Source of the DNA: Octopus sinensis
Taxonomy: Eukaryota
Reading direction: 5' to 3'
Assembly: GCF_006345805.1 (NCBI RefSeq)
Contig: NC_043001.1
Span: forward strand, 106,640,001 to 106,704,000
Length of the DNA: 64,000 bases
Positions 367 through 64,000 of the stretch are shown here, piece by piece (position 1 is the stretch's first letter; the number at the start of each line of letters is the position of its first letter). The notes beneath the pieces are model-generated. The model ran no database searches, was not told where the DNA came from, and saw only the letters and a program-made list of their open reading frames with translations. The translations under genes and the position numbers were made by a program.

Positions 367-794
367 CAATATAGTATAATATGTATATATCTGTATGTAT
401 GTGTATAATATGTTAATACACAATATACATACATATATATATGTGTCTATGTGTGTATATATATATATATATCATATATATCTATATATATTGACTATTG
501 TATATATATATATATATATATCATATATATATAATATACTATATATATAATATATATATATATACGTGTGTGTGCGTGTACATTTTATTTGTTTTGATCT
601 TACTTTCACTTTCACAATGTGTTACTCGGTATCTGTTTTCTTTTTATTTTGTTTTATGTATTGGTGTGTTTTCACCATAAATACATTCTCACATTTTTTT
701 CTAATTATACTTACGTTTTATTTTTTGAGTATACATATATATATATATATATATATTGTGTGTGTATGGATATATAGATGTATTTATATGTATG

Positions 795-861
<67 letters not shown>

Positions 862-1292
862 TGTATGTATGCGTGTATGTTGTGCTTGGTGTATATTTGT
901 ATTCTATATGAGACTGAACTATATATGCGTGTGCATTTGTGTGTGTATGTGTGTGTATGTGTGAGTGTGTGTACGAGTGGAGAGTGACAGGATGAGAGGG
1001 ACCATACGAACAAACACTTATAGACACAAAGACGCCAAAAAGAACGAAGAGACAGAGACAGAGACACACAGAAGTGTATATGTATGTATATGTATATGTA
1101 TGCTTGTGTGTACATATATATATATGTATACATACATACTTACATATATACATACATTCATACATACACATGTATATATATATATATATATATATATACA
1201 TACACACACTTACATATAAAAGACAATGAGAGGAAGGTGAGACGTGTGTTGTGTTTTTGTGTGTGTGTTTGTGTGTGTAATGTGTGTGTGTG

Positions 1293-1346
<54 letters not shown>

Positions 1347-2016
1347 TGTTTGTGAATGTTTGTGTTTTCTATTTGGAACTCCAACGAGCCACTGTTTGAC
1401 TTTCAAATGTTGGTATGAGGGGTACGGTGCTTATTGTTCTTGATGCTCTCATTGCTGTTGTATTATAAGCTGCATTTTTCAGGCGGCGAGCTGGCAGAAT
1501 CGTTAGCACGTCGGACAAAATGCTTAGCGGCACTTCGTCCGTCTTTACGTTCGGTGTTCAAATTCCAGCGAGGTCGACTTTGCCTTTTGTCCTTTTGGGG
1601 TCGATAAAGTTATTACCAGTTGAGCATTGGGGACGGATGTAATCGACTTACCCCCTACCCCGAAACTGTTGGCCTTGTGCCTAAATCGGAAACCATTATC
1701 TACGTCATTACTTATTGATGTGGTTGCTGCGTATGTAATTGTGGTTACTAAAGTTCTTGCAGCTGTCGTCGTTGTTGCTGTTGTTGTGACACCAGATGTC
1801 AGTTCTGACAGGCTTCGTAACAACTCACCCGTCACCGATTTTCATGGTGTTTGCTCAGGAACCTTGGCTAAAGGGAGATTTATCTTCATCGTTTTTCTCC
1901 TCTTCCACCCTGCCTCACGATACCCACGTCTCCCCGGCATCGCCTGAGCGGTCAGAGAAGAAGAAAAACCCTGTTCACGTAGGTTATGTGTATATGTGCG
2001 CAAATGTTTGTTTTAT

Positions 2017-2052
<36 letters not shown>

Positions 2053-2738
2053 TTGTGTGTGTGTGTGCGTGTCTGGCGGGTATTTCTTTGCTTTTATTTC
2101 AGTTGGAAAAAGATTATTTCAGATAGCAAATTCTTTGTCGTTTCCAGTATGTTAATATTAATAAACAATTCTTACACACACACACACACGACCACACACA
2201 CACACACGACCACACACACACACACACGACCACACACACACACACACGACCACACACACACACACGACCACACACACACAGATGCAGACATATGCTCACA
2301 CTCGTACACACGCAAAGACACACACATTTATTTACATATATATATATAGCTGTATATATACATACATGTATATATATATATGCACATGCAAATATGTGTA
2401 TATATGTATATGTATAATATATATATATATATATCTATATATATATATATATGTATAATATTTATATATCTATATGTATGTGTATATATGTTTTTAATAC
2501 ACATATACATATATATATATATTATTAATTTATTATTAATCATATTATTCATATAATATTATCATATATATATGTGGTGTATATATATATATTATATATA
2601 TATATACAATATAGTATAATATTTATATATCTGTATGTATGTGTATATATGTTTTAATACACATATACATACATATATATATGTGTCTATGTGTGTTATA
2701 TATATAATATATACATATATATATATATGTGTCTATGT

Positions 2739-2783
<45 letters not shown>

Positions 2784-3036
2784 CGTGTGTGTGCGTGTAC
2801 ATTTTATTTGTTTTGATCTTACTTTCACTTTCACAATGTGTTACTCGGTATCTCTTTTCTTTTTATTTTGTTTTATGTATTGGTGTGTTTTCACCATAAA
2901 TACATTCTCACATTTTTTTCTATTATACTCACGTTTTATTTTTGAGTATACATTATATATATATATGTGTGTATGGATATATAGATGTATTTATATGTAT
3001 GTATATATATATATATATATAATATATATATATATT

Positions 3037-3082
<46 letters not shown>

Positions 3083-3600
3083 TGTATGTATGTATGTATG
3101 TATGTATGTATGCGTGTATGTTGTGCTTGGTGTATATTTGTATTCTATATGAGACTGAACTATATATGCGTGTGCATTTGTGTGTGTATGTGTGTGTTGT
3201 GGTGAGTGTGTGTACGAGTGGAGAGTGACAGGATGAGAGGGACCATACGAACAAACACTTATAGACACAAAGACGCCAAAAAGAACGAAGAGACAGAGAA
3301 CACAGAAGTGTATATGTATGTATATGTATATGTATGCTTGTGTTACATATAATATATGTATACATACATACTTACATATATACATACATTCATACATACA
3401 CATGTATATATATATATATATATATATACATCACACAACTTACATATAAAAGACATGAGAGGAAGGTGAGACGTTGTGTGTTTTTTTGTGTGTTGTTTTG
3501 TGTGTGTATGTGTGTGTGTGTGTGTGTGTTGTGTGTGTGTGTGTGTGTGGTGTGTGTGTGTGTGTGTGTGTTGTGTGTGGTGTGTTGTGTGTGTGTGTGT
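1..3600. repeat. Tandem duplication with ~2250-bp period (1-1340 repeats as 2251-3590)
   Basis: Unique spacers such as gatgcagacatatgctcacactcg and ggagagtgacaggatgagagggaccatacg occur in both copies. The copies diverge after the (GT)n. Confidence 0.9.
1482..1692 (+). mobile_element. SINE family B copy (head ggcggcgagctggcagaa; core gaggtcgactttgcctttcatcctttcggggtcgataa)
   Basis: Matches the many other copies in the window. tRNA-like head with GTTCAAATTCC B box. Confidence 0.8.
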
Positions 3601-4081
3601 GAGTGTGTTACAGTGTGAGCAAAGTTATGCATAAAAACATACACACGCGCACAGGTAACATTCATACCTCTGTGTATATAATTGTGTTTGAAATCTAATA
3701 AATAATAAATATCGAGCTGGAAGTTTGCTATGAAAATATTATTAAGACAGCGCACATTTATAAACAACAATACAATAGCACACGATAATACCAGTCTTAT
3801 TACGAAAAAAAATGTTATCACACGCGTCTTGCTCTTCATGGAATAGCTGTGAGATAACTGTGACATAATAGTGAGTTGAGCTGCCATTGTGGCTCGGATA
3901 TCTCATGGCTTCTCCTGGAAAACGCCAAATGAGACGTACACGTTCGTTTTGAGGTAAGAGTTATGTTTTGTTCTGAATTTGTGTTTGGGTGTGACATATG
4001 TGTGCATGCGTGTGAATGTGAGAGGATCTTTGTGCATTTGTGTGTGTGTGTGTGTGTGTGTGTGTTGTGTGTGTGTGTGTG

Positions 4082-12600: not shown

Positions 12601-13161
12601 CGTGTGTAACATCACCGACCCACTTAATCATAAATGACAGCCAAGACAGCTAGAAAGAAAACATAGAAAATGTGCGGAAATCTGTTATATTAAATATGTA
12701 AATAAATTCTTTAAAACATTCTAACTTAATCACACGATTAGGAATACGTTTAATTATAATTATTTAACTCTTATAACTATTTAATTATAACAATTTAACT
12801 GTTATACTCACTTAATTATAGTTATTTAATATTAGCATGTTTCTTCATAATCTACTTCAACGAATGGGGTGACATTACGAATATTCTAACCTTGTATATT
12901 ATCACTACTTATACAATTATGAAAATTTAACTGGCAAAGATTTTACCATACTTAGAACTAAGTCAGTGATATGATTCTGGTCATTAGAGTGTTGCAGGTA
13001 AAGGCGACGTTCATGCATGGCCGCAGTCAAAGACATGACTGGATAATAAAATAATTGAGACTCTACCAACATTATAGAGCGTATAGAAAAATACATATAT
13101 TTCGTGTTGTTTACTACTGTTAGTGACGTCCTGTACGTATATATGCATATGCATACATACA

Positions 13162-13227
<66 letters not shown>

Positions 13228-13261
13228 ATATTGTAGAAAAGATCGTGGTTAAGGCCAAGAC

Positions 13262-13312
13262 AAAGTCTTATGAGTAGATTTGGTAGACGGAAACTGAAAA
13301 ATGCCCGTCGTA

Positions 13313-13396
<84 letters not shown>

Positions 13397-13508
13397 TATG
13401 TGTGTGTATATATACACACACATACATATAATTATATATATATATACACACATATATACGACGGGCATTTTTCAGCTTCCGTCTACCAAATCTACTCACA
13501 AGACTTTG
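13262..13508. repeat. Local inverted duplication of a SINE A segment around a microsatellite loop
   Basis: Arms of about 80 bp with 2 mismatches, sharing non-consensus variants. Confidence 0.8.
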
Positions 13509-28995: not shown

Positions 28996-29469
28996 CTTAT
29001 TACTATAATATCCTCTGTTCCTCTGTTCCATTTTTTGCACTATTGAAACAACTTCAGGCTTTATAACTTCCTCGTGTCACTATCTGCCAGACTTTCAAGA
29101 TATGTATTTTTTTTTATGTCCATGTTTAATACATAAATGTACAAGAACACGCGTATATGCATGCAACTACAAAGATGTGTGTATGAAAGCATGTGTACTT
29201 AAATGTGTGTGTGTATACATATAAACGCATACATACGTAAGTCTGGTTGTTTGTATGTTTGTATAGGTATCGTGTGCGTACAGATCTGTGTATTTCTTTG
29301 AAGAAACGACTTTATATTTATGTCTTTAAATTCAATGTCACATTTGGAGGTGAAAAAAAAATATTGATGTAAAACATGTCTTCCAAACTGACACTCTTGA
29401 AGTCGATGCTAGAAATAAGTAAACAGAATTGTTTGTCACAGAATCAGTAAACAGATAAATGAATAAGGA

Positions 29470-29549
<80 letters not shown>

Positions 29550-29568
29550 GTTGGTAGATAGATAGATA

Positions 29569-29728
29569 TGTTTCTTTATTAGCCACACAGGGCTGCACAC
29601 AGACAGGACAAATTACAAGGTAGAGATTTTCTTTTGGGGGTAAAAAAAAGGGAGGTTGGTTTTCGATCAAAGGGGATCGTAAAAGGAAAGAAAGAGGACA
29701 AAAAGGGGGGGATTAGATTTTTTTTTAA

Positions 29729-29729
<1 letters not shown>
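29569..29729 (-). mobile_element. ~160-bp 3' remnant of the same Tx1-like LINE
   Basis: tgtttctttattagccacacagggctgcacacaga...aaattacaaggtagag matches 4808 onward. Flanked by (GATA)n at 29471-29568 and 29730-29823. Confidence 0.85.
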
Positions 29730-29823
<94 letters not shown>

Positions 29824-29955
29824 TGTGCATTATACTAAGATACACACTTGCATCCATCCATCCATCCATCCATCCATCCATCCATCCATCCATACATACA
29901 TACATACATACATACATACATACATACATACATACATGCATGCATGCATGCATAC

Positions 29956-29986
<31 letters not shown>

Positions 29987-30705
29987 CATACATACATACG
30001 TAATCAAATAAAAGAAATTAAAATCCATTAATAGCAATACAACATTTTCCAAAATGTTATCACTCACAGCTCTGGGGATTCTGTGTAAGAGATAACTATA
30101 GATTATATACTTACTAAACCAACTGGAATTGGTCTCCTTGGTGTATTTCTAATGATTTTTCATGAACTAGATACTTTTTAGCTAGTACGTGACTAGTGTT
30201 TAATTTCCTAGCTGCGGCACTACTGTAGATAAGTCGTTTTATAAGTGTCTGCCAAACTTTGCTATCGAATTCTGATCGATAAGAACATGCTACAACGTTT
30301 TAATATCTTAATAAATAGCGTCCGACGAAGATAAAGTTTTCCTATGAAACAAGTAGTTCGTGTGGCGAAATATACACACAAACACACACATCCGTATAAG
30401 CGCATGTACTCGCACACACATATGTAAAATCTCGCAGACACAATCAGAAAGTCATGCGCAAGATTCACACATGCAAACACATGTTAAAGAACGTATACAT
30501 ATACACACACACACAGAGATTCCGTTTAATTCAATGTAGAGTCATTATATACAATTAGACCTCAATATACGTGCACCTGCATATGTATACACTTATTATC
30601 TATATGTGTATGTATAAGTGGGCGCTCACTTTCAAATGCATAAATATATATATATACATATATATATGCATACACACACACACGCATACAAATACATACA
30701 TATAT

Positions 30706-30770
<65 letters not shown>

Positions 30771-30795
30771 ATGTGTTGTGTGTGTACGTGTATAT

Positions 30796-30839
<44 letters not shown>

Positions 30840-30928
30840 TGTATGTATGTTTGTGCCAGTACATATATGGATGTTTGCGTGCGTATGTGTGTGTGTGTTG
30901 TGTGTGTGTGTATGTGTTGTATGTGTAC

Positions 30929-30976
<48 letters not shown>

Positions 30977-31204
30977 CACACATGTGCGTGTGCATGTAAA
31001 TATATGTGTGGTTTTGTGTCTACATCTATACATGTATGTATGTGTTTGTGAATAAGCAGAGTGTGATATGAATCTCGAAGAACCTATCGTATAATTAATT
31101 ATTTGTTTTGCTTTGTACACTCACCGACACACTGACACACACACCTCCAGACGCACAAACACACACACAGAAAGGAGCGCACATGTATGCATATGTCGTG
31201 GCTC

Positions 31205-52549: not shown

Positions 52550-53849
52550 TAGTCAAGTATGAAATTTGTAGTAAAGAAAAAGTTTGCTAATGTTTTATAA
52601 ATACAAGTGTCTTATTAATCAAAGTATGCACCCATATCGTCAACACACTTTTGCCATTTCATCGGTATCTTGTCCAGCCCGGAACTGTAAAAGCTGGCAA
52701 TCTAGAGTCGATAAAATCTTGGACGGCCTGTTTTACAGCATCGTCGGAATTAAATTTTTTTCCTATCAAAAAGTTATCCAAATTCTGGAAGAAGTGGTAA
52801 TCAGTGGGGGCAAGATCACATGAGTATGGTGGATGATGGAGAACTTCCAACTCCAACTCCTATAGTCTCGCATTTGTCATTTTTGCGATGTGTGGGCGGC
52901 GGCGTCTTGCAACAAAATAGGAGTGGATCTGTCAACTAATCTAGGCTGTTTCTTTTTATTTTATTTTATTTATTTATTTTTTGTAGGTTCTGCATAATTT
53001 GATCCAGTTGGTTGCAGTATACTTCGGCCGTGATTGATGAGCCAGGATTATTGAAATCATAATGGATCACACCTGCGCCAGACCACCACATACACACCAT
53101 CAGCTTATTTTGATGAATTTTGCTTTTTGGACTGTGTTTTGATGGCTCGCCTTTGTCCAACCATTGTGCTATACGTTTACGATTGTTGTATAGGATCAAT
53201 TTCTCATCACATGTCACAATTCGATTAAAAAATGATTCATTTTTGTGACGAGATAGAAGTATAATGCAGGCTTCCAAACGTTGCTATTTCTAATTTTCAT
53301 TGAATTCATGTGGAATCCACTTATCCAACTTTTTCACTTTACCAATTTGAACTAGGCGAGTCAATATTGTTTGCTTGTTAACACCAAACAACAACAATAA
53401 TTCACGGGCACTTTGAGATGGATCTGCCTCGACGGCGGCTTTCAGTTCGTCATTATCTACCTTTGTTTCTGGTAGACCACGTTGCTCATTTGTGAAGTCA
53501 AAGTTACCAGAACGAAATTTTGCAAACCAGTTTGATACTAGCTGCTGTGTAATAACATTAGAATGAAATACTCCACTGATATTCCGAGCTGTCTGTGATG
53601 CTGTATTTCCAAGAAAGAACTCATATTTCAAAACTGTACGAATTTCCGACTTATCCATGTCTAAACAAAAATAGCAAAAACGATTTATAAATACTTTGTA
53701 AATCGCAAAATGAGTTAGAATAAAGAAAGAGATGTGTCAGCTTTCTAACAAAAAATTTAAATTGTCAAAATATAATAATAGCGCAAAATGAGCAGCTGTC
53801 AAATTTTATTGTATACCTTACGACAAATTTCATATTTGACGACCGAATA
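52550..53849 (-). mobile_element. Near full-length defective mariner (Tc1/mariner, DD34D-type) transposon
   Basis: Split transposase with WIPHE, TCDEK, LLQDAARPH and HPPYSCDLAPTDYHFF. In-frame stop at 53290 and an (AAAT)n expansion near 52950-52980. TIRs 52550-52574 and 53818-53847 match at 22/25, with TA at 53848-53849. Confidence 0.95.
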
Positions 53850-58620: not shown

Positions 58621-58814
58621 TACAAATAATTAAACCAGGAAACTTGACTGCTAACATCTCTTTAAGAGGTATATATCCTCATAATAATAAGTATATATAT
58701 ATAGGTATTTTTTTTTAACGTTTCAGCTCAGAGCTGCAGCCATGCTGATGCACCGCCGTTTGTTGATGCAAACAGGAAAAACAGAACTCAAAATATGAGT
58801 ATATGTATATTTTT

Positions 58815-59331
58815 CAGTTCTATATTTAAGAGATGAGGAATTATGTACATTATTTACATAATTTTACATTTGACGGATATTTGTCCTCATCTTGTTTATT
58901 GTTAACGCAATGTTTCGGCTGATACACCCTCCAGCCATCATCAAGTTAAAATAATAGACAGAACACCACTGGAAAATACAAAAACTAAAAGAAGCAACAC
59001 ATATGTTAGGACACAATAACCTCCTAAGCAGACTGAGTGCAGATATGGGAATCGGTATTAAGGATAGGAGGATATTAGATTTATAAGCCTTAAAATTCAC
59101 TCCTTAGTTGCCCATGGATATATGGCTTAGTGGTTAAGAGCATGGGCTACTAACACTAAGATTCCGAGTTTGATTCCAGACAATGACCTGAATAATAATA
59201 ATAATATTAAAAAATACGTTAGGAATGAGAACCCAGGTTTGAAATTTCCCCAAGACACCTGATGAAGGCTGGAGGGTATATCAGCTGAAACGTTAACAAC
59301 AAACAAGATGAGGACAAATGTAAATAATGTA
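58815..59331 (+). mobile_element. tRNA-headed SINE-like element with PLE-type hammerhead tail and inverted partial tail
   Basis: Inverted tail 58815-58945. Head from 59110 with A box TGGCTTAGTGG and B box GTTTGATTCC, then (TAA)n, then a tail with CTGATGA (59259-59265)...GAAAC (59287-59291). Confidence 0.7.
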
Positions 59332-60072
59332 TATATTTATTAACATTTAGCAGAAGTAACAGAGTGACTCAAGGTCCGAGAGTTTTGTGCATTGATAGAT
59401 AAGTGCATGAGAGTCTCAGACCTTGAGTCACTCTGTTACTTCCACTAAATGTTAATAAAACTAAATATGTATATGTATATATTATACATACATACACACT
59501 AAAAAGTTTGATAATACAAACAGGATAGTAGAACTTGAAACATGAATATTTTTTATTTAATCAATAGAAGTTACAAAGTTACTCAATGGCAGAGAGTTTA
59601 GTACATTCCCACTTCATTACTTTCTAACTTTTGCCAATTAAATAAATAATATGTACATTTATGCCAGAGCCGCTTGACTGGCACCAATGCCGGTGGCACG
59701 TAAATAGTACATTGCCAGTGCCGCCTGACTGGCACCCATAAAAAGCACCCACTACACTCTCGGAGTGATTAGCGTTAAGAAGGGCATTCAGCTGTAGAAA
59801 TCTTGTCAAATCAGATTGGAGCCTGGTGCAGCTTCCTGGCTTGCCAGTTCTCAGTCAAACCCATGTCAGCATGGAAAGCAGATGTTAAACAACGATGATG
59901 ATGATTATGATATATATTATGTGGACAAGCAAAAACTCAGTAGAGTTACATTTCTTAATAAGTTTGACTCAGCTGCAACATGGTTTCAAATTTTGTGGGT
60001 GCATAATGGATTGGAGACAAATTCAAAAGTTTGTTCAAGCAAGATCAGACGAATGCAGCTGAACCTTGGATA

Positions 60073-60078
60073 TTTATT
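60073..60078 (-). terminator. Candidate polyadenylation signal AATAAA
   Basis: + strand tttatt about 50 nt downstream of the stop of the minus-strand terminal exon. Confidence 0.45.
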
Positions 60079-60126
60079 AAGCAAATTACATCCATCGTTG
60101 CTCGTTGATTGAGAGCCTTCTGGTAT

Positions 60127-61049
60127 TTAGGAATTAAAATTTGGTTTGTTAGTCCAAGAATTAACATTGCCTGCTTGTTGAGGAGGCCACTGGTTGTTAT
60201 TGGGAAGAAATCCTTGTGTCTGAGCAAAAGATGATTGTGAATTTTGAGTCCAGTTTGGTGCATTTGGAGGTGGGTTGTTTGGGATTGTGGAAGATGGTTG
60301 GCTTGTGGAATTTGAGGAGGAGCTATTCAAAGTATTTGGTGGGGGAACGCTAAAAGGATTTGAAGACCAATTGGTAGGCCAATTTGAAGACCAGGCATTA
60401 GGATTAATTTGTGATGAGCCCTGAGGGATATTTTGTGCTGAAATGTTTGGAGTATTTTGAGACCAACTATTAGGATTATTTTGGGTCCAACTATTCAGTG
60501 CAGGCCAATTATTAGGGGTCATTTGAGTTGAACTGTTTGGGGTATTTTGGAATGAAGTGTTAGGATTATTTTGGGACCAATTGTTTGGAACATTCGAGGA
60601 CCAGTTATTTGGGGTATTCTGAGACCAGTTATTTGGGGTACTTTGAGACCAACTGTTTAAGGTATTCTGAGACCAATTATTTGGGGTATTCTGAGACCAA
60701 CTATTTGGGGTATTCTGAGACCAACTGTTTGGAGTACCTTGAGGCCAATTGTTTGGAGTATTTGGCCATTTGTTAGGAGCATTTGTAGAAGGCCAGTTAT
60801 TGGTCCCAGTTTGGCCCCAACTGTTTGCAGGATTTGAGGGCCACTGGTTAGGCGGATTTGTGGACCAATTGTTAGATGGATTTAGAGGTCTGTTGCCAAA
60901 GGTGTTTGGAAACCTATTGCTAGAGGCTTGAAAAGATTGAGGTTTTGGATCTTTTGGTGGCCAACTGGTATAAGCACTAGAATGCCAATTGTTGGATTGT
61001 TGTGGCCTGGATTTTTGTTCATTTCGGTGGCCTTGATGACTGACACCCT
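60127..61049 (-). CDS. Terminal coding exon (~306 aa) of an unidentified gene; N/W/P/S/Q-rich low-complexity tail with tandem octapeptide repeat
   Basis: Acceptor ttttgtttttttttcag (AG at 61051-61050). Open frame ag|GGT GTC AGT CAT... to TAA at 60129-60127, length 923 nt = 2 + 307 codons. Reads GVSHQGHRNEQKSRPQQSNNW...PNNWSQNT repeats...NKPNFNS*. Extends ORF-track entry 60127..60522 upstream with no stop. AATAAA follows at 60078-60073. Confidence 0.85.
60565..60756 (-). repeat. Coding 24-bp tandem repeat, 8 Trp-containing octapeptides (consensus PN[NS]WSQNT)
   Basis: PNNWPQGT PNSWSQNT PNSWSQNT PNNWSQNT LNSWSQST PNNWSQNT PNNWSSNV PNNWSQNN, followed by degenerate units in the same 8-aa register. 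Confidence 0.9.
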
Positions 61050-62155
61050 CTGAAAAAAAACAAAATAATAATAATAATGGTACACATTAGTACAAAGCTA
61101 CAAATCTTTAAAGAGTGGCTTAACTGACTGAATCAACCCCAATACCGGAGCTATTTAATCAATCCCAGCACATGTGCTACTGTACTAAATCCAGCTCATA
61201 AGTGTTTCATTAACCTGAGAAGAATATAAAGGCAAGAATGCATTAAGGCAGGATTTGTAACCAGAAAATAGAGGGACACAATTGAAAAGTTAGAGGTTTC
61301 ATCAGATGTCCTACCATTTGTTCCACTACACACTCGACCTCTTCACTGTCTGTGACCCACTTTTAGAATAGGTACATCATCACCTTGCATGTCATAAAAG
61401 GTGACCAAACGGGCATCAGCTGTAAAGCGTTGCATGAGAAAAACCTGTCAATCTCCATGCCAACAAGAAAAGGCAGATAAAAAAACGATGGTAAGTTATC
61501 TCCCCACACACAGATGCAAACTCTTAACCATCCATCCATCCAGATCTTCTCTTCCTATTCTCTCTAATAATTTTGTACTTTCAAAACTACGTCCTAATAC
61601 CATCTTACCACAATGTTTATCTCACTTTCCTGTTACTCCCATTCACCATTATATCACACACAGAATATACAGTAGCCATATATCTTCTCTACTGCAAGAC
61701 ACCCATTCTAGTCTGTCCCACTCAAAACTTGCCAGTGCTTCCTGGCTGGCTTCCATTCCAGTGGCACATAAAAAGCACCCACTACATTCTCGGAGTGGTT
61801 GGCATTAGGAAGGTCATCCAGCTGTAGAAACATTGCCAGATCAGATTGGGGCCTGGTACGGCCTCCTGGCTTGCCAGTCCTCCATCAAACTGTCCAACCC
61901 ATGCCAGCATGGAAAGCAGACATTAAACGATGATGATGATGATTACATCCCCCATAATGTAGCGGTTTAACAAAAGGGACCGATAAAATAAGTACAACGG
62001 AGTCAATTTGCTTGGCAAAGCAGTGCCCTAGTATGGGCACAGTCAAATGACTGAAACAATCAAAAGATAATGGATATGTCTAACATGGCTTATAGTCCAA
62101 AGAGGGTAACAACATACAGATAGCATTTATAAGGACAAAAGAAATAAAATTGTAC

Positions 62156-62208
62156 CAGATTTCTTCTTGTAGTTTCTACTATTCTTCTGCGTCACTGGAG
62201 ATTTATTT
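62156..62208 (-). CDS. 53-nt internal coding exon of the same gene (K-NKSPVTQKNSRNYKKKS-E)
   Basis: Acceptor aatcatttttgcag (AG at 62210-62209) and donor G|GTACAA (GT at 62155-62154). Starts in phase 2 and ends in phase 1, exactly bridging the flanking exons. The donor is only moderately strong. Confidence 0.7.
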
Positions 62209-62264
62209 CTGCAAAAATGATTTTTAAAAATATTAATAACTGATTTCAAAGAGAAAAAAGAAAA

Positions 62265-63160
62265 TATGGTGGCTGTGTGGTAAGAAGCTTCTTTTCCAAC
62301 CACATGGTTCCATGTTCAGTCCCACTGCATGGTACCTTGGGCAAATGTCTTCTACTACAGCCCCAGGCCAACCAAAGCCTTGTAAGTGGATCTGATAGAT
62401 GGAAACTGAAAGAAGCCTATCGTGTGTGTGTATATATATAAAAGTGCACGAGTGGCTGTGTGGTAAGCCGCTTGCTTACCAACCACATGTTTCCGGGTAC
62501 AGTCCCATTGTGTGGCACCTTGGGCAAGTGTCTTCTACTATCGCCCCAGGCCAACCAAAGCCTTGTAAGTGGATATGGTATATGAAAACTGAAAGAAGCC
62601 CATACAATCGCTTGACAACCGATGTTGGTGTGCTTACATCATGTAACTTGGCAGTTCGGCAAAAGAGACCAATAGAATAAGTACTAGGCTTACAAAGAAT
62701 AAGTCCTAGGGTCGGTTTGTTCATATAAAGGTGTTGCTCCAGCATGGTCACAGTCAAAAGACTGAAACAAGTAAAAGAGTATACTTTACACAGAACACAG
62801 GCCTGGCTGTGTAGTTACGAGGCTTGTTTTGCAACCTCATAGCTTTGAGTTCAATCCAGTTGTGTGATATCTAGGGCAAGTATCTTCTACTATATAGCCC
62901 TTGGTTGACCGATGCCTTGTGAGTGATTCTGTATACAGAAACTGAATGGAAGATCATTTGTGTGTGTGCATGTGTGTTTGGTTTGGTTTGGTTTATTTCT
63001 CGTCACCATTTAACTGGTGTTTGTTTTGGTCTCCAAAACTTAGTAGAATGGCAAGGGACTCCGATAAGGGACCACACTTGTACTGGGGCTGATTTGTTTG
63101 ACTATGCCCTTCGAGGCAGTGCCCCAGCATGGCCGCAGTCCACTGACTGAAGCAAGAGAA
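62265..63160 (+). mobile_element. Cluster of three SINE family A copies inside the intron 62209-63913
   Basis: Heads near 62265, 62446 and 62800. Confidence 0.8.
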
Positions 63161-63913
63161 AGATCAAAGCTAAAATACGTGTATGTCTCCTAGATTTTAG
63201 GATGGTTATATCACATCCCTATTTTGTCATCAGAGGGAATTAAAAACGCTGACATCATGAAGAGTATTCAACCAGAAAATACAGCCTCACAAAGTCCCAT
63301 CCTACTCATGCCAGCATAGAAAAGTGGATACAAAAATGATGAGTGGGGTTTGTTATTATCATATTCTTTTGTTTCTTTCAGTCATTTGACTGCAACCATG
63401 CTGGAGCACCGCCTTTTAGTCAAACAAATCGTTCACCCCACACCTCGTACTGTTTCTACTTCGCAGATTTTCACCTACCGCGGCGTGTTTGCAATGTAAC
63501 ACTCGCCACAGTCGAGGGAGTTACTGTACCTCGAGTGTAACACTCGTAAATGGGCATTTAGTGCAATGGGAGGTAACCCATTCCATAGAGGGACGTAATT
63601 CCAGTTAAACCATTCGACAAATACAGACGAGGACTAGACTAAGTGATATACCGTATTTTAACGTGTATAAGCAACACTCGTTTTGGGGGCTTAAAATTTG
63701 GAAAAAAGGTTTTGTAAGGGATTATAATATTATCCATATATAAGAAACTCCCATATTTTTTTAACCTGATTTTTGACAAAAAAGGGTTCCTTATGTTAAA
63801 ATATGGAAATTGTTATGATTAACTAAAAATTCTTAAAACAATGCCCCAGCATGGCCACAGTCCAATGTCTGAATCCAATAAATAGAACAAGAACAAAATA
63901 ACAAATTCCTTAC

Positions 63914-64000
63914 TTCAAATAGAATGGATTGTTGGAATCTTTCTTTCGGCGTGACTGGTTTTGACCGTCCTTGTTCGCATCATCACTTTCAGAATTGTCA
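63914..64000 (-). CDS. Partial upstream coding exon of the same gene (DNSESDDANKDGQNQSRRKKDSNNPFYL-K), continuing beyond the window
   Basis: Open frame from 63999 to the donor AA|GTAAGG (GT at 63913-63912), phase 2. Acidic then basic composition. Confidence 0.7.

What the first reader, a model, noticed from the sequence alone, without database searches (positions are those of the whole stretch)
60127..64000. Three-exon gene end encoding a prion-like Trp octapeptide repeat tail
Seen in sequence: three exons join in phase (2, then 2-to-1, then 1) to give ...DNSESDDANKDGQNQSRRKKDSNNPFYLKNKSPVTQKNSRNYKKKSEGVSHQ.... This is followed by about 270 residues with no acidic residues, about two dozen Trp and eight perfect-register PN[NS]WSQNT units. 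The ORF track shows only the last 131 aa and misses the splicing. Established knowledge: aromatic stickers in N/Q/S/P spacers are typical of prion-like, phase-separating domains, and 8-residue Trp repeats recall the PrP octarepeat by analogy only. Inference: an acidic patch, an NLS-like basic stretch and then a low-complexity tail suggest a nuclear RNP or condensate protein with a lineage-specific repeat expansion. The gene identity is unknown.
Basis: partly seen in the sequence, partly recalled or inferred. Interest (0 to 1): 0.75.

Follow-up and report, generated by a model that had tools for sequence, protein, structure and literature searches.

The report
Octopus NAF1 gene's tryptophan-repeat tail
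This stretch holds the last three coding exons of the octopus version of NAF1, a housekeeping factor that assembles H/ACA RNA-protein particles; its tryptophan-repeat tail is an octopus-lineage form of the aromatic-rich disordered tail that NAF1 carries in all animals sampled, so it is a curiosity, not a new kind of gene.

Summary
The three minus-strand exons join in frame to give 353 aa with 24 Trp and 273 final residues without Asp or Glu. Trp recurs every 8 residues 13 times. Only 5 units match PN[NS]WSQNT exactly, not 8.

The gene is now identified as the octopus orthologue of NAF1, the non-core H/ACA ribonucleoprotein assembly factor. The translation equals the C-terminus of the Octopus sinensis protein named "NAF1-like isoform X2", except for two extra octapeptide units. 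It is 87% identical to O. bimaculoides NAF1, whose 9-exon locus is collinear with the window. The Gar1/Naf1 core domain lies beyond base 64000.

The Trp repeat is shared by Octopus (8-aa unit) and Argonauta (11-aa unit). It is absent from the other molluscs sampled; Mytilus has a different 14-aa Trp repeat.

Across about 65 animal NAF1 proteins the tail holds about 11% aromatic and about 2% acidic residues. Octopods use Trp where others use Phe or Tyr.

The tail is predicted disordered and shows purifying selection (omega about 0.37). Its high proline content argues against an amyloid-type prion domain.

I infer, without a direct test, that it is a multivalent aromatic "sticker" tail supporting NAF1's nuclear shuttling and recruitment to transcription sites.

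The parts
63914..64000 (-). 3' part (87 nt) of NAF1 coding exon 7 of 9. It encodes the acidic patch DNSESDD, the basic patch RRKK (63940-63951) and NNPFYLK. The exon continues about 22 codons beyond the window edge.
   Evidence: Exon numbering comes from tblastn of P0001 on the O. bimaculoides locus L001. The donor GAA|GTAAGG is identical in L001.
62209..63913 (-). Intron 7 (1705 nt), GT..AG, holding SINE-like repeat copies.
62156..62208 (-). Coding exon 8 (53 nt), encoding (K)NKSPVTQKNSRNYKKKS, with the KKK patch at 62160-62168. It is needed to keep the reading frame.
   Evidence: The same 53-nt exon with the same splice sites is present in L001.
61050..62155 (-). Intron 8 (1106 nt), GT..AG.
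60127..61049 (-). Coding part of the last exon (exon 9): 307 codons plus stop TAA (60127-60129). This is the whole low-complexity tail.
60955..60987 (-). WHSSAYTSWPP, a short Trp motif at the start of the tail. Both Trp are invariant in all four octopod sequences. A 'WPP'-type motif recurs in several other lophotrochozoan NAF1 proteins.
60568..60879 (-). In-register Trp octapeptide array, residues 104-207, with 13 Trp. The eight best units (T/V-P-N-N/S-W-S/P-Q-N type) lie at 60568-60759.
60643..60690 (-). Two octapeptide units (48 nt, NTPNNWSQNTLNSWSQ) present in the window but absent from the O. sinensis database protein P0039. Their exact placement is ambiguous within the repeat.
60448..60519 (-). 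Second, shorter block of the same Trp unit (residues 224-247).
60073..60078 (-). AATAAA 49 nt after the stop codon, a candidate poly(A) signal. This is weak evidence, because the hexamer occurs 175 times in the window.

Best explanation
Window 60127-64000 (minus strand) is the 3' end of the NAF1 gene of an octopus of the O. sinensis/vulgaris group. It holds the distal part of exon 7, exon 8 and exon 9.

From the literature, NAF1 binds the pseudouridine synthase dyskerin through a Gar1-like core. It escorts dyskerin-NOP10-NHP2 to nascent H/ACA RNAs at RNA polymerase II transcription sites. It shuttles between nucleus and cytoplasm, and GAR1 replaces it before the particle reaches nucleoli or Cajal bodies.

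The exons in the window encode the charged linker (acidic patch and K/R patches) and the entire C-terminal disordered tail. In octopods this tail is built from Trp-bearing units: W-S-Q-N-T-P-N-N/S every 8 residues in Octopus and every 11 in Argonauta. The array grows and shrinks by whole units.

The tail keeps the composition that NAF1 tails have across the animals sampled: about 11% aromatic residues, almost no acidic residues, and Pro/Asn/Gln/Ser spacers.

Inferred, not shown: the Trp residues act as multivalent 'stickers' in an uncharged flexible chain. They would give weak cohesive contacts, of the kind made by nucleoporin FG domains, by the GF repeats of the paralogue GAR1, or by the polymerase II CTD. 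Such contacts would help NAF1 cross nuclear pores and dwell at transcription sites.
For: Identity (shown):
- The full-library HMMER search found a 706-aa protein matching residues 1-353 at E 1.5e-154 and 87% identity.
- That protein carries Pfam PF04410 Gar1/Naf1 at residues 232-319, E 8e-25.
- Its sources name it O. bimaculoides LOC106868703 / NAF1. The O. sinensis 'NAF1-like isoform X2' (P0039) and about 70 NAF1 orthologues follow in the hit list.
- The window's translation is identical to the P0039 C-terminus except for a 16-aa, two-unit insertion.
- The O. bimaculoides locus L001 has 9 coding exons with the same last three exons and splice sites. It is collinear with window 58758-64000.

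Constraint on the tail (shown):
- Against O. bimaculoides, dS is 0.114 and dN 0.063. Omega is 0.37 over the repeat tail.
- All 21 O. bimaculoides Trp align with Trp in the window.
- Only 1 of 22 aligned Trp codons changed, against 4.9-6.3 expected neutrally (P 0.006-0.03).
- Sixteen Trp are invariant across four octopod sequences, including Argonauta at 52% identity.
- Between repeat units pN/pS is 0.25.

Composition rule (shown):
- In 64-67 NAF1 orthologues the tail's F+Y+W median is 10.8-11%, against 2.0% in the N-terminal disordered region of the same proteins (Wilcoxon p 5e-12).
- Octopods have 10.6-11.3% aromatic residues, mostly Trp. Other lineages use mainly Phe or Tyr.

Disorder: AlphaFold2 gives mean pLDDT 41 and no secondary structure.

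Literature:
- NAF1 shuttles, binds NAP57/dyskerin, sits at H/ACA transcription sites and is replaced by GAR1 (PMC2063812; reviews).
- Yeast Naf1 interacts with the polymerase II CTD (PMC5425277).
- GAR1's GF-rich disordered regions behave like FG repeats (PMC12951762).
- Cohesion of FG domains needs uncharged spacers without negative charge and rises as spacers shorten (PMC9918544).
Against: - No expression data could be consulted. The two supporting protein models are themselves database predictions.
- The Gar1-like core is outside the window, so membership rests on orthologues and on collinearity.
- The tail mechanism is inference from composition only. No binding partner of any NAF1 tail was confirmed in the papers I could read.
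- Nup98 FG domains select against Trp, so the FG analogy is imperfect.
- Trp are not significantly better conserved than the other tail residues (Fisher p 0.33).
- Alignments within repeats favour Trp-Trp pairing.
- The linker (first 100 aa) shows omega about 1.4, on few sites.
- Nucleotide identity of exon 9 to O. bimaculoides (86.7%) is no higher than that of the introns (81-91%).
Confidence: 0.85

Rival explanations
1. The tail is a tolerated by-product of replication slippage with no sequence-dependent role. NAF1's function lies in the Gar1-like core. Selection only keeps the last exon open and soluble.
For: - Unit number differs: 8 units in the window against 6 in the P0039 and P0001 proteins.
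- There are further 7-aa and 3-aa indels against O. bimaculoides.
- Unit length differs between Octopus (8) and Argonauta (11).
- Exon 9 nucleotide identity is about the same as intron identity.
- Trp are not more conserved than other tail residues (Fisher p 0.33).
Against: - Omega is 0.37 in the tail, and pN/pS between units is 0.25.
- Trp codons changed less than the neutral expectation.
- Sixteen Trp are invariant out to Argonauta.
- Aromatic content is held near 11% and acidic content near 2% in NAF1 tails across the animals sampled, five times the aromatic content of the N-terminal disordered region of the same proteins.
Confidence: 0.2
2. The tail is a true prion-like, amyloid-forming domain. 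It would switch NAF1 between soluble and self-templating aggregated states.
For: N+Q reaches 34 in an 80-residue window, above the 30-per-80 criterion recalled from Michelitsch and Weissman. There are almost no charged residues.
Against: - Proline makes up 15.8% of the tail, and the longest Pro-free stretch is 17 residues. From established knowledge of prion-propensity scales, proline is strongly disfavoured in amyloid cores.
- AlphaFold2 predicts no beta structure.
- The units have no His and almost no Gly, so they do not resemble the PrP octarepeat beyond the period of 8 and one Trp per unit.
Confidence: 0.05
3. The Trp array is a specific peptide ligand of the GW182/TNRC6 type, an 'Ago hook' or CCR4-NOT W-motif. 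It would link H/ACA RNP assembly to Argonaute/Piwi or deadenylase complexes in octopods.
For: There are 24 Trp, each flanked by small polar residues in a disordered chain. From memory of the Argonaute W-pocket structures, that is the general context accepted by those pockets.
Against: - Only 1 of 24 Trp has an adjacent Gly.
- The papers read here report no link between NAF1 and Argonaute.
- Other animals fill the same tail with Phe or Tyr, which do not fit W-pockets. This points to a composition-level role, not a Trp-specific ligand.
Confidence: 0.04
4. The model is an artefact. The long open frame is a non-coding tandem repeat that happens to lack stops, and the exons are not spliced as proposed.
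For: Tandem repeats can hold frames open, and no transcript data were available here.
Against: - The open frame extends well beyond the repeat on both sides.
- Substitution patterns are frame-specific.
- The same three exons, phases and splice sites occur in O. bimaculoides, and the full-length 706-aa protein is recovered there.
- An Argonauta protein has the same architecture.
Confidence: 0.02

Closest known systems
NAF1 (human NAF1 / yeast Naf1p), non-core H/ACA RNP assembly factor
   Same: - It is the orthologue. The annotated octopus proteins that share this C-terminus carry the Gar1/Naf1 core (PF04410).
- They also carry the GSDASW...EPP...YSDDE motif and K/R patches.
- They end in a long acid-poor, aromatic-rich disordered tail.
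   Different: - The aromatic residue is Trp, arranged in a regular 8-residue tandem unit. Most animals have irregular Phe- or Tyr- and Pro-rich tails.
- The tail is long, about 300 aa.
- The near-terminal D-x-R-[YFL]-[IV]-Q-N motif of other lophotrochozoan NAF1 proteins is missing.
Argonauta hians and Octopus bimaculoides NAF1 tails
   Same: They share the same W-S-Q-N-T-P-N unit. Sixteen Trp positions are invariant.
   Different: - The unit is 11 residues in Argonauta.
- O. bimaculoides and the O. sinensis database protein have 6 core units, against 8 in the window.
Mytilus NAF1 tail
   Same: It is also an NAF1 tail with a tandem Trp-bearing repeat, and Trp is 3.3-3.8% of the tail, depending on where the tail is taken to start.
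   Different: - The unit is different, a 14-aa SDNT[SN]WQAPxRSS type containing Asp and Arg.
- Mytilus keeps the terminal D-x-R-Y-I-Q-N motif.
- It looks like an independent expansion.
GAR1 glycine-arginine-rich (GF/RGG) disordered domains
   Same: GAR1 is the paralogue that takes NAF1's place on dyskerin. Its flanking disordered regions also carry periodic aromatic residues that mediate cohesive contacts (PMC12951762).
   Different: GAR1's spacers are Gly/Arg-rich and positively charged, and they target nucleoli and Cajal bodies. The octopus NAF1 tail has 2.6% Gly and 0.7% Arg.
Cohesive FG-repeat domains of nucleoporins (Nup98 type)
   Same: Both are charge-depleted, especially of acidic residues. 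Both have uncharged polar spacers and regularly spaced aromatic residues. Shorter spacers give stronger cohesion (PMC9918544).
   Different: - The tail has no FG motifs, only a single FG dipeptide.
- It uses Trp, which Nup98 domains avoid.
- Its spacing is 8 residues against about 12.
- It is attached to a soluble shuttling factor, not a pore anchor.
PrP octarepeat region and Q/N-rich prion domains
   Same: It shares the 8-residue period with one Trp per unit, and it is Q/N-dense.
   Different: - It lacks the His/Gly composition that defines the PrP unit.
- It is proline-rich, unlike yeast prion domains.
- There is no evidence of homology.

Membership tests
NAF1 (H/ACA RNP non-core assembly factor) | Gar1/Naf1 beta-barrel core domain (Pfam PF04410) | tested here: met
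   The core lies outside the window. It is present in P0001 (E 8e-25, residues 232-319). It is also precomputed for P0039, whose last 337 aa equal the window's translation apart from a 16-aa insertion.
NAF1 (H/ACA RNP non-core assembly factor) | NAF1-type motif GSDASW..EPP..(Y/F)SDDE followed by K/R-rich patches after the core | tested here: met
   The motif is aligned across 25 orthologues, including the octopods. The motif itself lies just beyond base 64000. The downstream RRKK and KKK patches are in the window.
NAF1 (H/ACA RNP non-core assembly factor) | No Gly/Arg-rich (GAR) domains, which distinguishes it from the paralogue GAR1 | tested here: met
   The tail has Gly 2.6% and Arg 0.7%.
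NAF1 (H/ACA RNP non-core assembly factor) | Orthologous position and gene structure | tested here: met
   Window 58758-64000 is collinear with the 3' end of the O. bimaculoides NAF1 locus. Exons, phases and splice sites are the same.
NAF1 (H/ACA RNP non-core assembly factor) | Binds dyskerin competitively with GAR1, and is absent from mature RNPs, nucleoli and Cajal bodies | not testable with these tools
   Known for human NAF1 (PMC2063812). It needs experiments in octopus cells or with recombinant proteins.
Q/N-rich prion-like domain | At least 30 Gln+Asn in 80 consecutive residues (criterion recalled from Michelitsch and Weissman 2000) | tested here: met
   The maximum is 34 N+Q in the window starting at residue 166.
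Q/N-rich prion-like domain | Few prolines and few charged residues, so that an amyloid core can form | tested here: not met
   Charged residues are few (no D/E, 1.8% K+R). But Pro is 15.8%, and the longest Pro-free stretch is 17 residues.
Q/N-rich prion-like domain | Self-templating aggregation | not testable with these tools
   Needs fibre or yeast reporter assays. AlphaFold2 shows no beta structure, which is only weak evidence.
PrP octarepeat | His- and Gly-rich copper-binding octapeptide unit | tested here: not met
   None of the 19 in-register units contains His. Gly occurs in only four of them.
GW182/TNRC6-type Argonaute-binding (GW/WG) domain | Trp mostly adjacent to Gly (GW/WG dipeptides) | tested here: not met
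   One of 24 Trp has a neighbouring Gly (W124, SWGQ).
GW182/TNRC6-type Argonaute-binding (GW/WG) domain | Binding of Trp to the PIWI-domain pockets of an Argonaute | not testable with these tools
   No complex prediction or binding assay was available.
FG-nucleoporin cohesive domain | Repeated FG (GLFG/FxFG) motifs | tested here: not met
   There is a single FG dipeptide (TFGN). The aromatic residues are Trp.
FG-nucleoporin cohesive domain | Charge-depleted, uncharged spacers with regularly spaced aromatic residues | tested here: met
   There are 273 residues without D/E and a Trp every 8 residues. This is a 'works like' resemblance only.

The most novel reading that the evidence does not exclude
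The octopod NAF1 tail is a natural Trp-for-Phe/Tyr 'sticker swap' in an essential RNP assembly factor. On this reading it is a dense, regular, acid-free Trp repeat that is cohesive on its own. It would act as a built-in module for crossing the nuclear-pore FG phase or for docking on polymerase II CTD clusters. NAF1 tails in general would then be selected for aromatic valence (about 11%) and not for sequence. That would make them a ready comparative system for testing sticker-and-spacer rules in vivo.
Probability: 0.25. Interest if true: 0.5.

Novelty: new variant of a known kind. Interest (0 to 1): 0.3.

Why it matters
The gene itself is ordinary and already annotated, so the finding does not reveal a new system.

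What is new, as far as my literature searches show, is a description of the tail. NAF1 tails in the animals sampled keep a fixed aromatic fraction and exclude acidic residues. The aromatic residue itself changes by lineage: Phe, Tyr, or Trp in octopods. The array also changes by whole units between close relatives.

NAF1 loss of function causes short-telomere disease in humans (reviews). From memory of Stanley et al. 2016, which I could not retrieve, the disease truncations remove C-terminal sequence needed for nuclear localisation. A comparative rule for what the tail must contain would therefore help in interpreting C-terminal variants. It would also give a simple natural test of sticker-and-spacer models of disordered regions.

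Tried and rejected
- The word-indexed protein search with the 353-aa fragment found nothing at E <= 0.001 among 1279 candidates. This was a false negative: the full HMMER scan later found the orthologue.
- A third word-indexed search with the Gar1 core alone returned only 8 short proteins and no squid, cuttlefish or Nautilus NAF1. Whether the Trp repeat predates Octopoda therefore stays open.
- Looking up the 131-aa mechanical ORF and P0039 by exact sequence gave no contig. The window's own continuation beyond base 64000 could not be fetched.
- Pfam, PDB and Rfam searches on the fragment or window gave nothing.
- The other 37 hits are unrelated low-complexity repeats, as the five I inspected show (P0002-P0005, P0012).
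- I looked for a downstream alternative exon encoding the lophotrochozoan D-x-R-[YFL]-[IV]-Q motif on the minus strand of the whole window and found none.
- Several primary NAF1 papers were not held in the library, so I could not read them. They are Stanley 2016, Hoareau-Aveilla 2006, Fatica 2002, Dez 2002 and Yang 2005. What I say about C-terminal function in human NAF1 is from memory and is marked as such.
- I considered a secreted, N-glycosylated protein, because there are 14 N-x-S/T sequons, 7 of them N-W-S/T. [quoted passage not shown]


Full report
**1. What is in the sequence**

On the minus strand, three segments join in one frame:
- 64000..63914;
- 62208..62156;
- 61049..60127.

All splice sites are canonical: donors GAA|GTAAGG and CTG|GTACAA, acceptors tttttgcag|A and ttttttttcag|A. 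The product is 353 residues ending in TAA at 60129-60127. The other two frames carry 36 and 7 stops. Without the 53-nt middle exon the frame shifts into an early stop.

Composition:
- 24 Trp;
- the last acidic residue at position 80, so 273 residues without Asp or Glu;
- N 79, S 60, P 48, Q 33, T 27.

Thirteen successive Trp (W108 to W204) are 8 residues apart, with one compensating 9/7 pair. The motif PN[NS]WSQNT occurs exactly 5 times, not 8. Eight units from W148 to W204 are nevertheless in perfect register. Tandem Repeats Finder gives a 24-bp period with 10.8 copies at 60505-60763.

**2. Is it coding?**

- The stop-free frame 60130-61086 (319 codons) is the longest in the whole window. Unlike the runners-up it is not a translated microsatellite.
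- It extends well beyond the tandem repeat on both sides.
- Differences between repeat units are mainly synonymous in this frame: pN/pS is 0.25 for the eight core units and 0.59 for 19 units. In the two other frames the ratio is 1.07 and 1.19.
- An AATAAA lies 49 nt after the stop. This is weak evidence in such AT-rich DNA.

**3. Identity**

Pfam, PDB and the word-indexed protein search found nothing with the fragment. The full HMMER scan of 1.84 billion representatives found one strong match. P0001 is 706 aa, with E 1.5e-154 and 87% identity, and covers the whole query with its residues 366-706.

- P0001 carries the Gar1/Naf1 domain PF04410 at residues 232-319 (E 8e-25).
- Searching with P0001 returned source names: O. 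bimaculoides LOC106868703 / NAF1; O. sinensis 'H/ACA ribonucleoprotein complex non-core subunit NAF1-like isoform X2' (P0039, 711 aa); Argonauta hians NAF1-like (P0040, 760 aa); and about 70 NAF1 orthologues from other animals.
- The window's translation is identical to the last 337 residues of P0039 except that the window has 16 more residues, exactly two octapeptide units.

The window therefore comes from an octopus of the O. sinensis/vulgaris group.

**4. Gene structure**

The O. bimaculoides locus was fetched as L001. Its NAF1 gene has 9 coding exons over 17.6 kb.
- The window holds the distal 87 nt of exon 7; 22 codons of that exon lie past base 64000.
- It also holds the 53-nt exon 8 and the whole of exon 9.
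- Splice-site sequences are the same in both species.
- Window 58758-64000 is collinear with L001 14816-23637 at 81-91% identity, introns included.
- In O. bimaculoides the upstream neighbour is a divergently transcribed Tim17-family gene.

**5. How the tail evolves**

Against O. bimaculoides:
- dS is 0.114 and dN 0.063, so omega is 0.56 overall;
- omega is 0.37 for the repeat tail;
- omega is about 1.4 for the first 100 residues, the charged linker, on few sites;
- indels are in whole units or short blocks (16, 7 and 3 residues).

Trp conservation:
- All 21 Trp of O. bimaculoides align with Trp in the window.
- One of 22 aligned Trp codons has changed, against 4.9-6.3 expected at the neutral rate (P 0.006-0.03). 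Trp are not significantly more conserved than the other tail residues (Fisher p 0.33).
- With Argonauta added (52% identity), 16 Trp remain invariant.
- Argonauta uses the same W-S-Q-N-T-P-N core in an 11-residue unit.

The repeat is therefore older than the Octopus-Argonauta split. It changes in unit number and length but keeps its Trp.

**6. Other animals**

- In 75 NAF1 hits, tail Trp content is 5-6% only in the three octopods.
- Mytilus species reach 3.3-3.5% with an unrelated 14-residue Trp unit.
- The median elsewhere is about 1%.

The total aromatic content of the tail is nearly constant:
- The median is 10.8-11% (interquartile range 9.6-12.5), against 2.0% in the N-terminal disordered region of the same proteins (Wilcoxon p 5e-12).
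- Acidic residues are around 2%.
- Phe dominates in 42 orthologues, Tyr in 18 and Trp in 4.
- Octopods have 10.6-11.3% aromatic residues.

The Trp octapeptide is thus a lineage-specific way of meeting a composition that NAF1 tails keep throughout the animals sampled.

Seventeen lophotrochozoan orthologues also carry a near-terminal D-x-R-[YFL]-[IV]-Q-N motif. The octopods lack it. No downstream exon in the window encodes it.

**7. Structure and prion question**

- AlphaFold2 on the four-sequence alignment gives mean pLDDT 41 and no secondary structure, consistent with disorder. The alignment is shallow.
- The tail reaches 34 N+Q per 80 residues.
- It is 15.8% proline, with no Pro-free stretch longer than 17 residues.
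- From established knowledge of prion-propensity scales, that much proline argues against an amyloid core.
- The units contain no His and hardly any Gly. The PrP octarepeat comparison therefore reduces to the period of 8 and one Trp per unit.

**8. What it most likely does**

Shown in the literature for NAF1:
[quoted passage not shown] - It competes with GAR1 and is absent from nucleoli and Cajal bodies (PMC2063812; reviews).
- Yeast Naf1 interacts with the polymerase II CTD.

Further context:
- The paralogue GAR1 has Gly/Arg/Phe-rich disordered domains. Their Phe mediate cohesive contacts likened to nucleoporin FG repeats (PMC12951762).
- For FG domains, absence of negative charge is required for cohesion, and shorter uncharged spacers increase it (PMC9918544).

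My inference is that the octopus tail, with a Trp every 8 residues in acid-free polar/proline spacers, is a multivalent cohesive tail. It would help NAF1, with its cargo, pass the pore and dwell at polymerase II sites. Proline would keep it from forming amyloid. I put this mechanism at roughly 40%, and the identity as NAF1 at above 95%. From memory only, Stanley et al. 2016 reported that human disease truncations remove a C-terminal motif needed for nuclear localisation. I could not retrieve that paper.

**9. Rivals**

- A neutral slippage product: about 0.2. Unit-number change and intron-like nucleotide divergence speak for it. Omega, Trp retention and the conserved aromatic fraction speak against it.
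- An amyloid-type prion domain: about 0.05.
- A GW182-like Argonaute or CCR4-NOT ligand: about 0.04. Only one Trp has a neighbouring Gly, and other lineages use Phe or Tyr in the same tail.
- A gene-model artefact: about 0.02.

**10. Verdict**

Its prion framing is not supported, and the gene is an already annotated NAF1 orthologue. The interest lies in the tail as a variant of a known kind, and in the aromatic-content rule that emerged from the comparison.

Noticed in passing
window 62024-62044, 62735-62755, 63120-63140, 63842-63862 (all minus strand), plus 7 more sites across the window: A SINE-like repeat marked by GACTGTGGCCATGCTGGGGCA occurs 11 times in the window, against 0 expected by chance. 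Four copies sit in the two NAF1 introns, in the same orientation as the gene. Related copies are scattered through the O. bimaculoides locus L001.
   Followed up: partly
window 60643-60690 (placement ambiguous within the repeat): The window has two more octapeptide units (48 nt) than the O. sinensis database protein P0039, and is otherwise 100% identical over 337 aa. This could be a repeat-number polymorphism, a sibling-species difference (O. vulgaris against O. sinensis) or an assembly collapse.
   Followed up: partly
C-termini of P0041, P0043, P0049, P0057, P0062, P0079, P0097 and others, against P0001, P0039, P0040: Seventeen lophotrochozoan NAF1 proteins (bivalves, Patella, Batillaria, a chiton, Lingula) carry a conserved near-terminal motif D-x-R-[YFL]-[IV]-Q-N. 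The three octopod proteins lack it. No minus-strand frame in the window encodes it.
   Followed up: partly
P0049, P0054, P0107 (Mytilus NAF1), residues about 640-830: Mussel NAF1 tails carry about 10-14 copies of a different 14-residue Trp unit (SDNT[SN]WQAPxRSS type). This is apparently an independent Trp-repeat expansion in the same protein region.
   Followed up: partly
window 53290-53658 (minus strand): A 122-aa ORF matches the Mos1/mariner transposase HTH domain (PF17906, E 2.3e-14). It is a transposon remnant about 6.5 kb downstream of NAF1.
   Followed up: yes
window 61049-64000, first 100 residues of the fragment: The charged linker between the NAF1 core and the repeat tail shows dN/dS of about 1.4 against O. 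bimaculoides (23 non-synonymous and 4 synonymous differences). That is faster than the repeat tail itself (0.37), though the number of sites is small.
   Followed up: no
window 63925-63933 and 60355-60363: There are two NPF tripeptides (NNPFYLK after the RRKK patch, SSNPFSVPPP late in the tail). Several other lophotrochozoan NAF1 proteins have R/K-N-P-F/W after their basic patch. NPF is the EH-domain ligand motif, but its relevance here is unknown.
   Followed up: no
window 566-3900, 13011-13499, 29338-31120 and elsewhere: Most other long mechanical ORFs in the window are translations of TA/CA-type microsatellites (Y/I/H/T/C-rich). Outside the NAF1 end the window looks gene-poor and repeat-rich.
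   Followed up: partly
tool behaviour: The word-indexed protein search missed the 87-100% identical octopus NAF1 proteins when queried with the low-complexity tail. It also returned only 8 short hits for the Gar1 core. The index-free HMMER scan found them. Negative results from the indexed search on low-complexity queries should not be trusted.
   Followed up: yes
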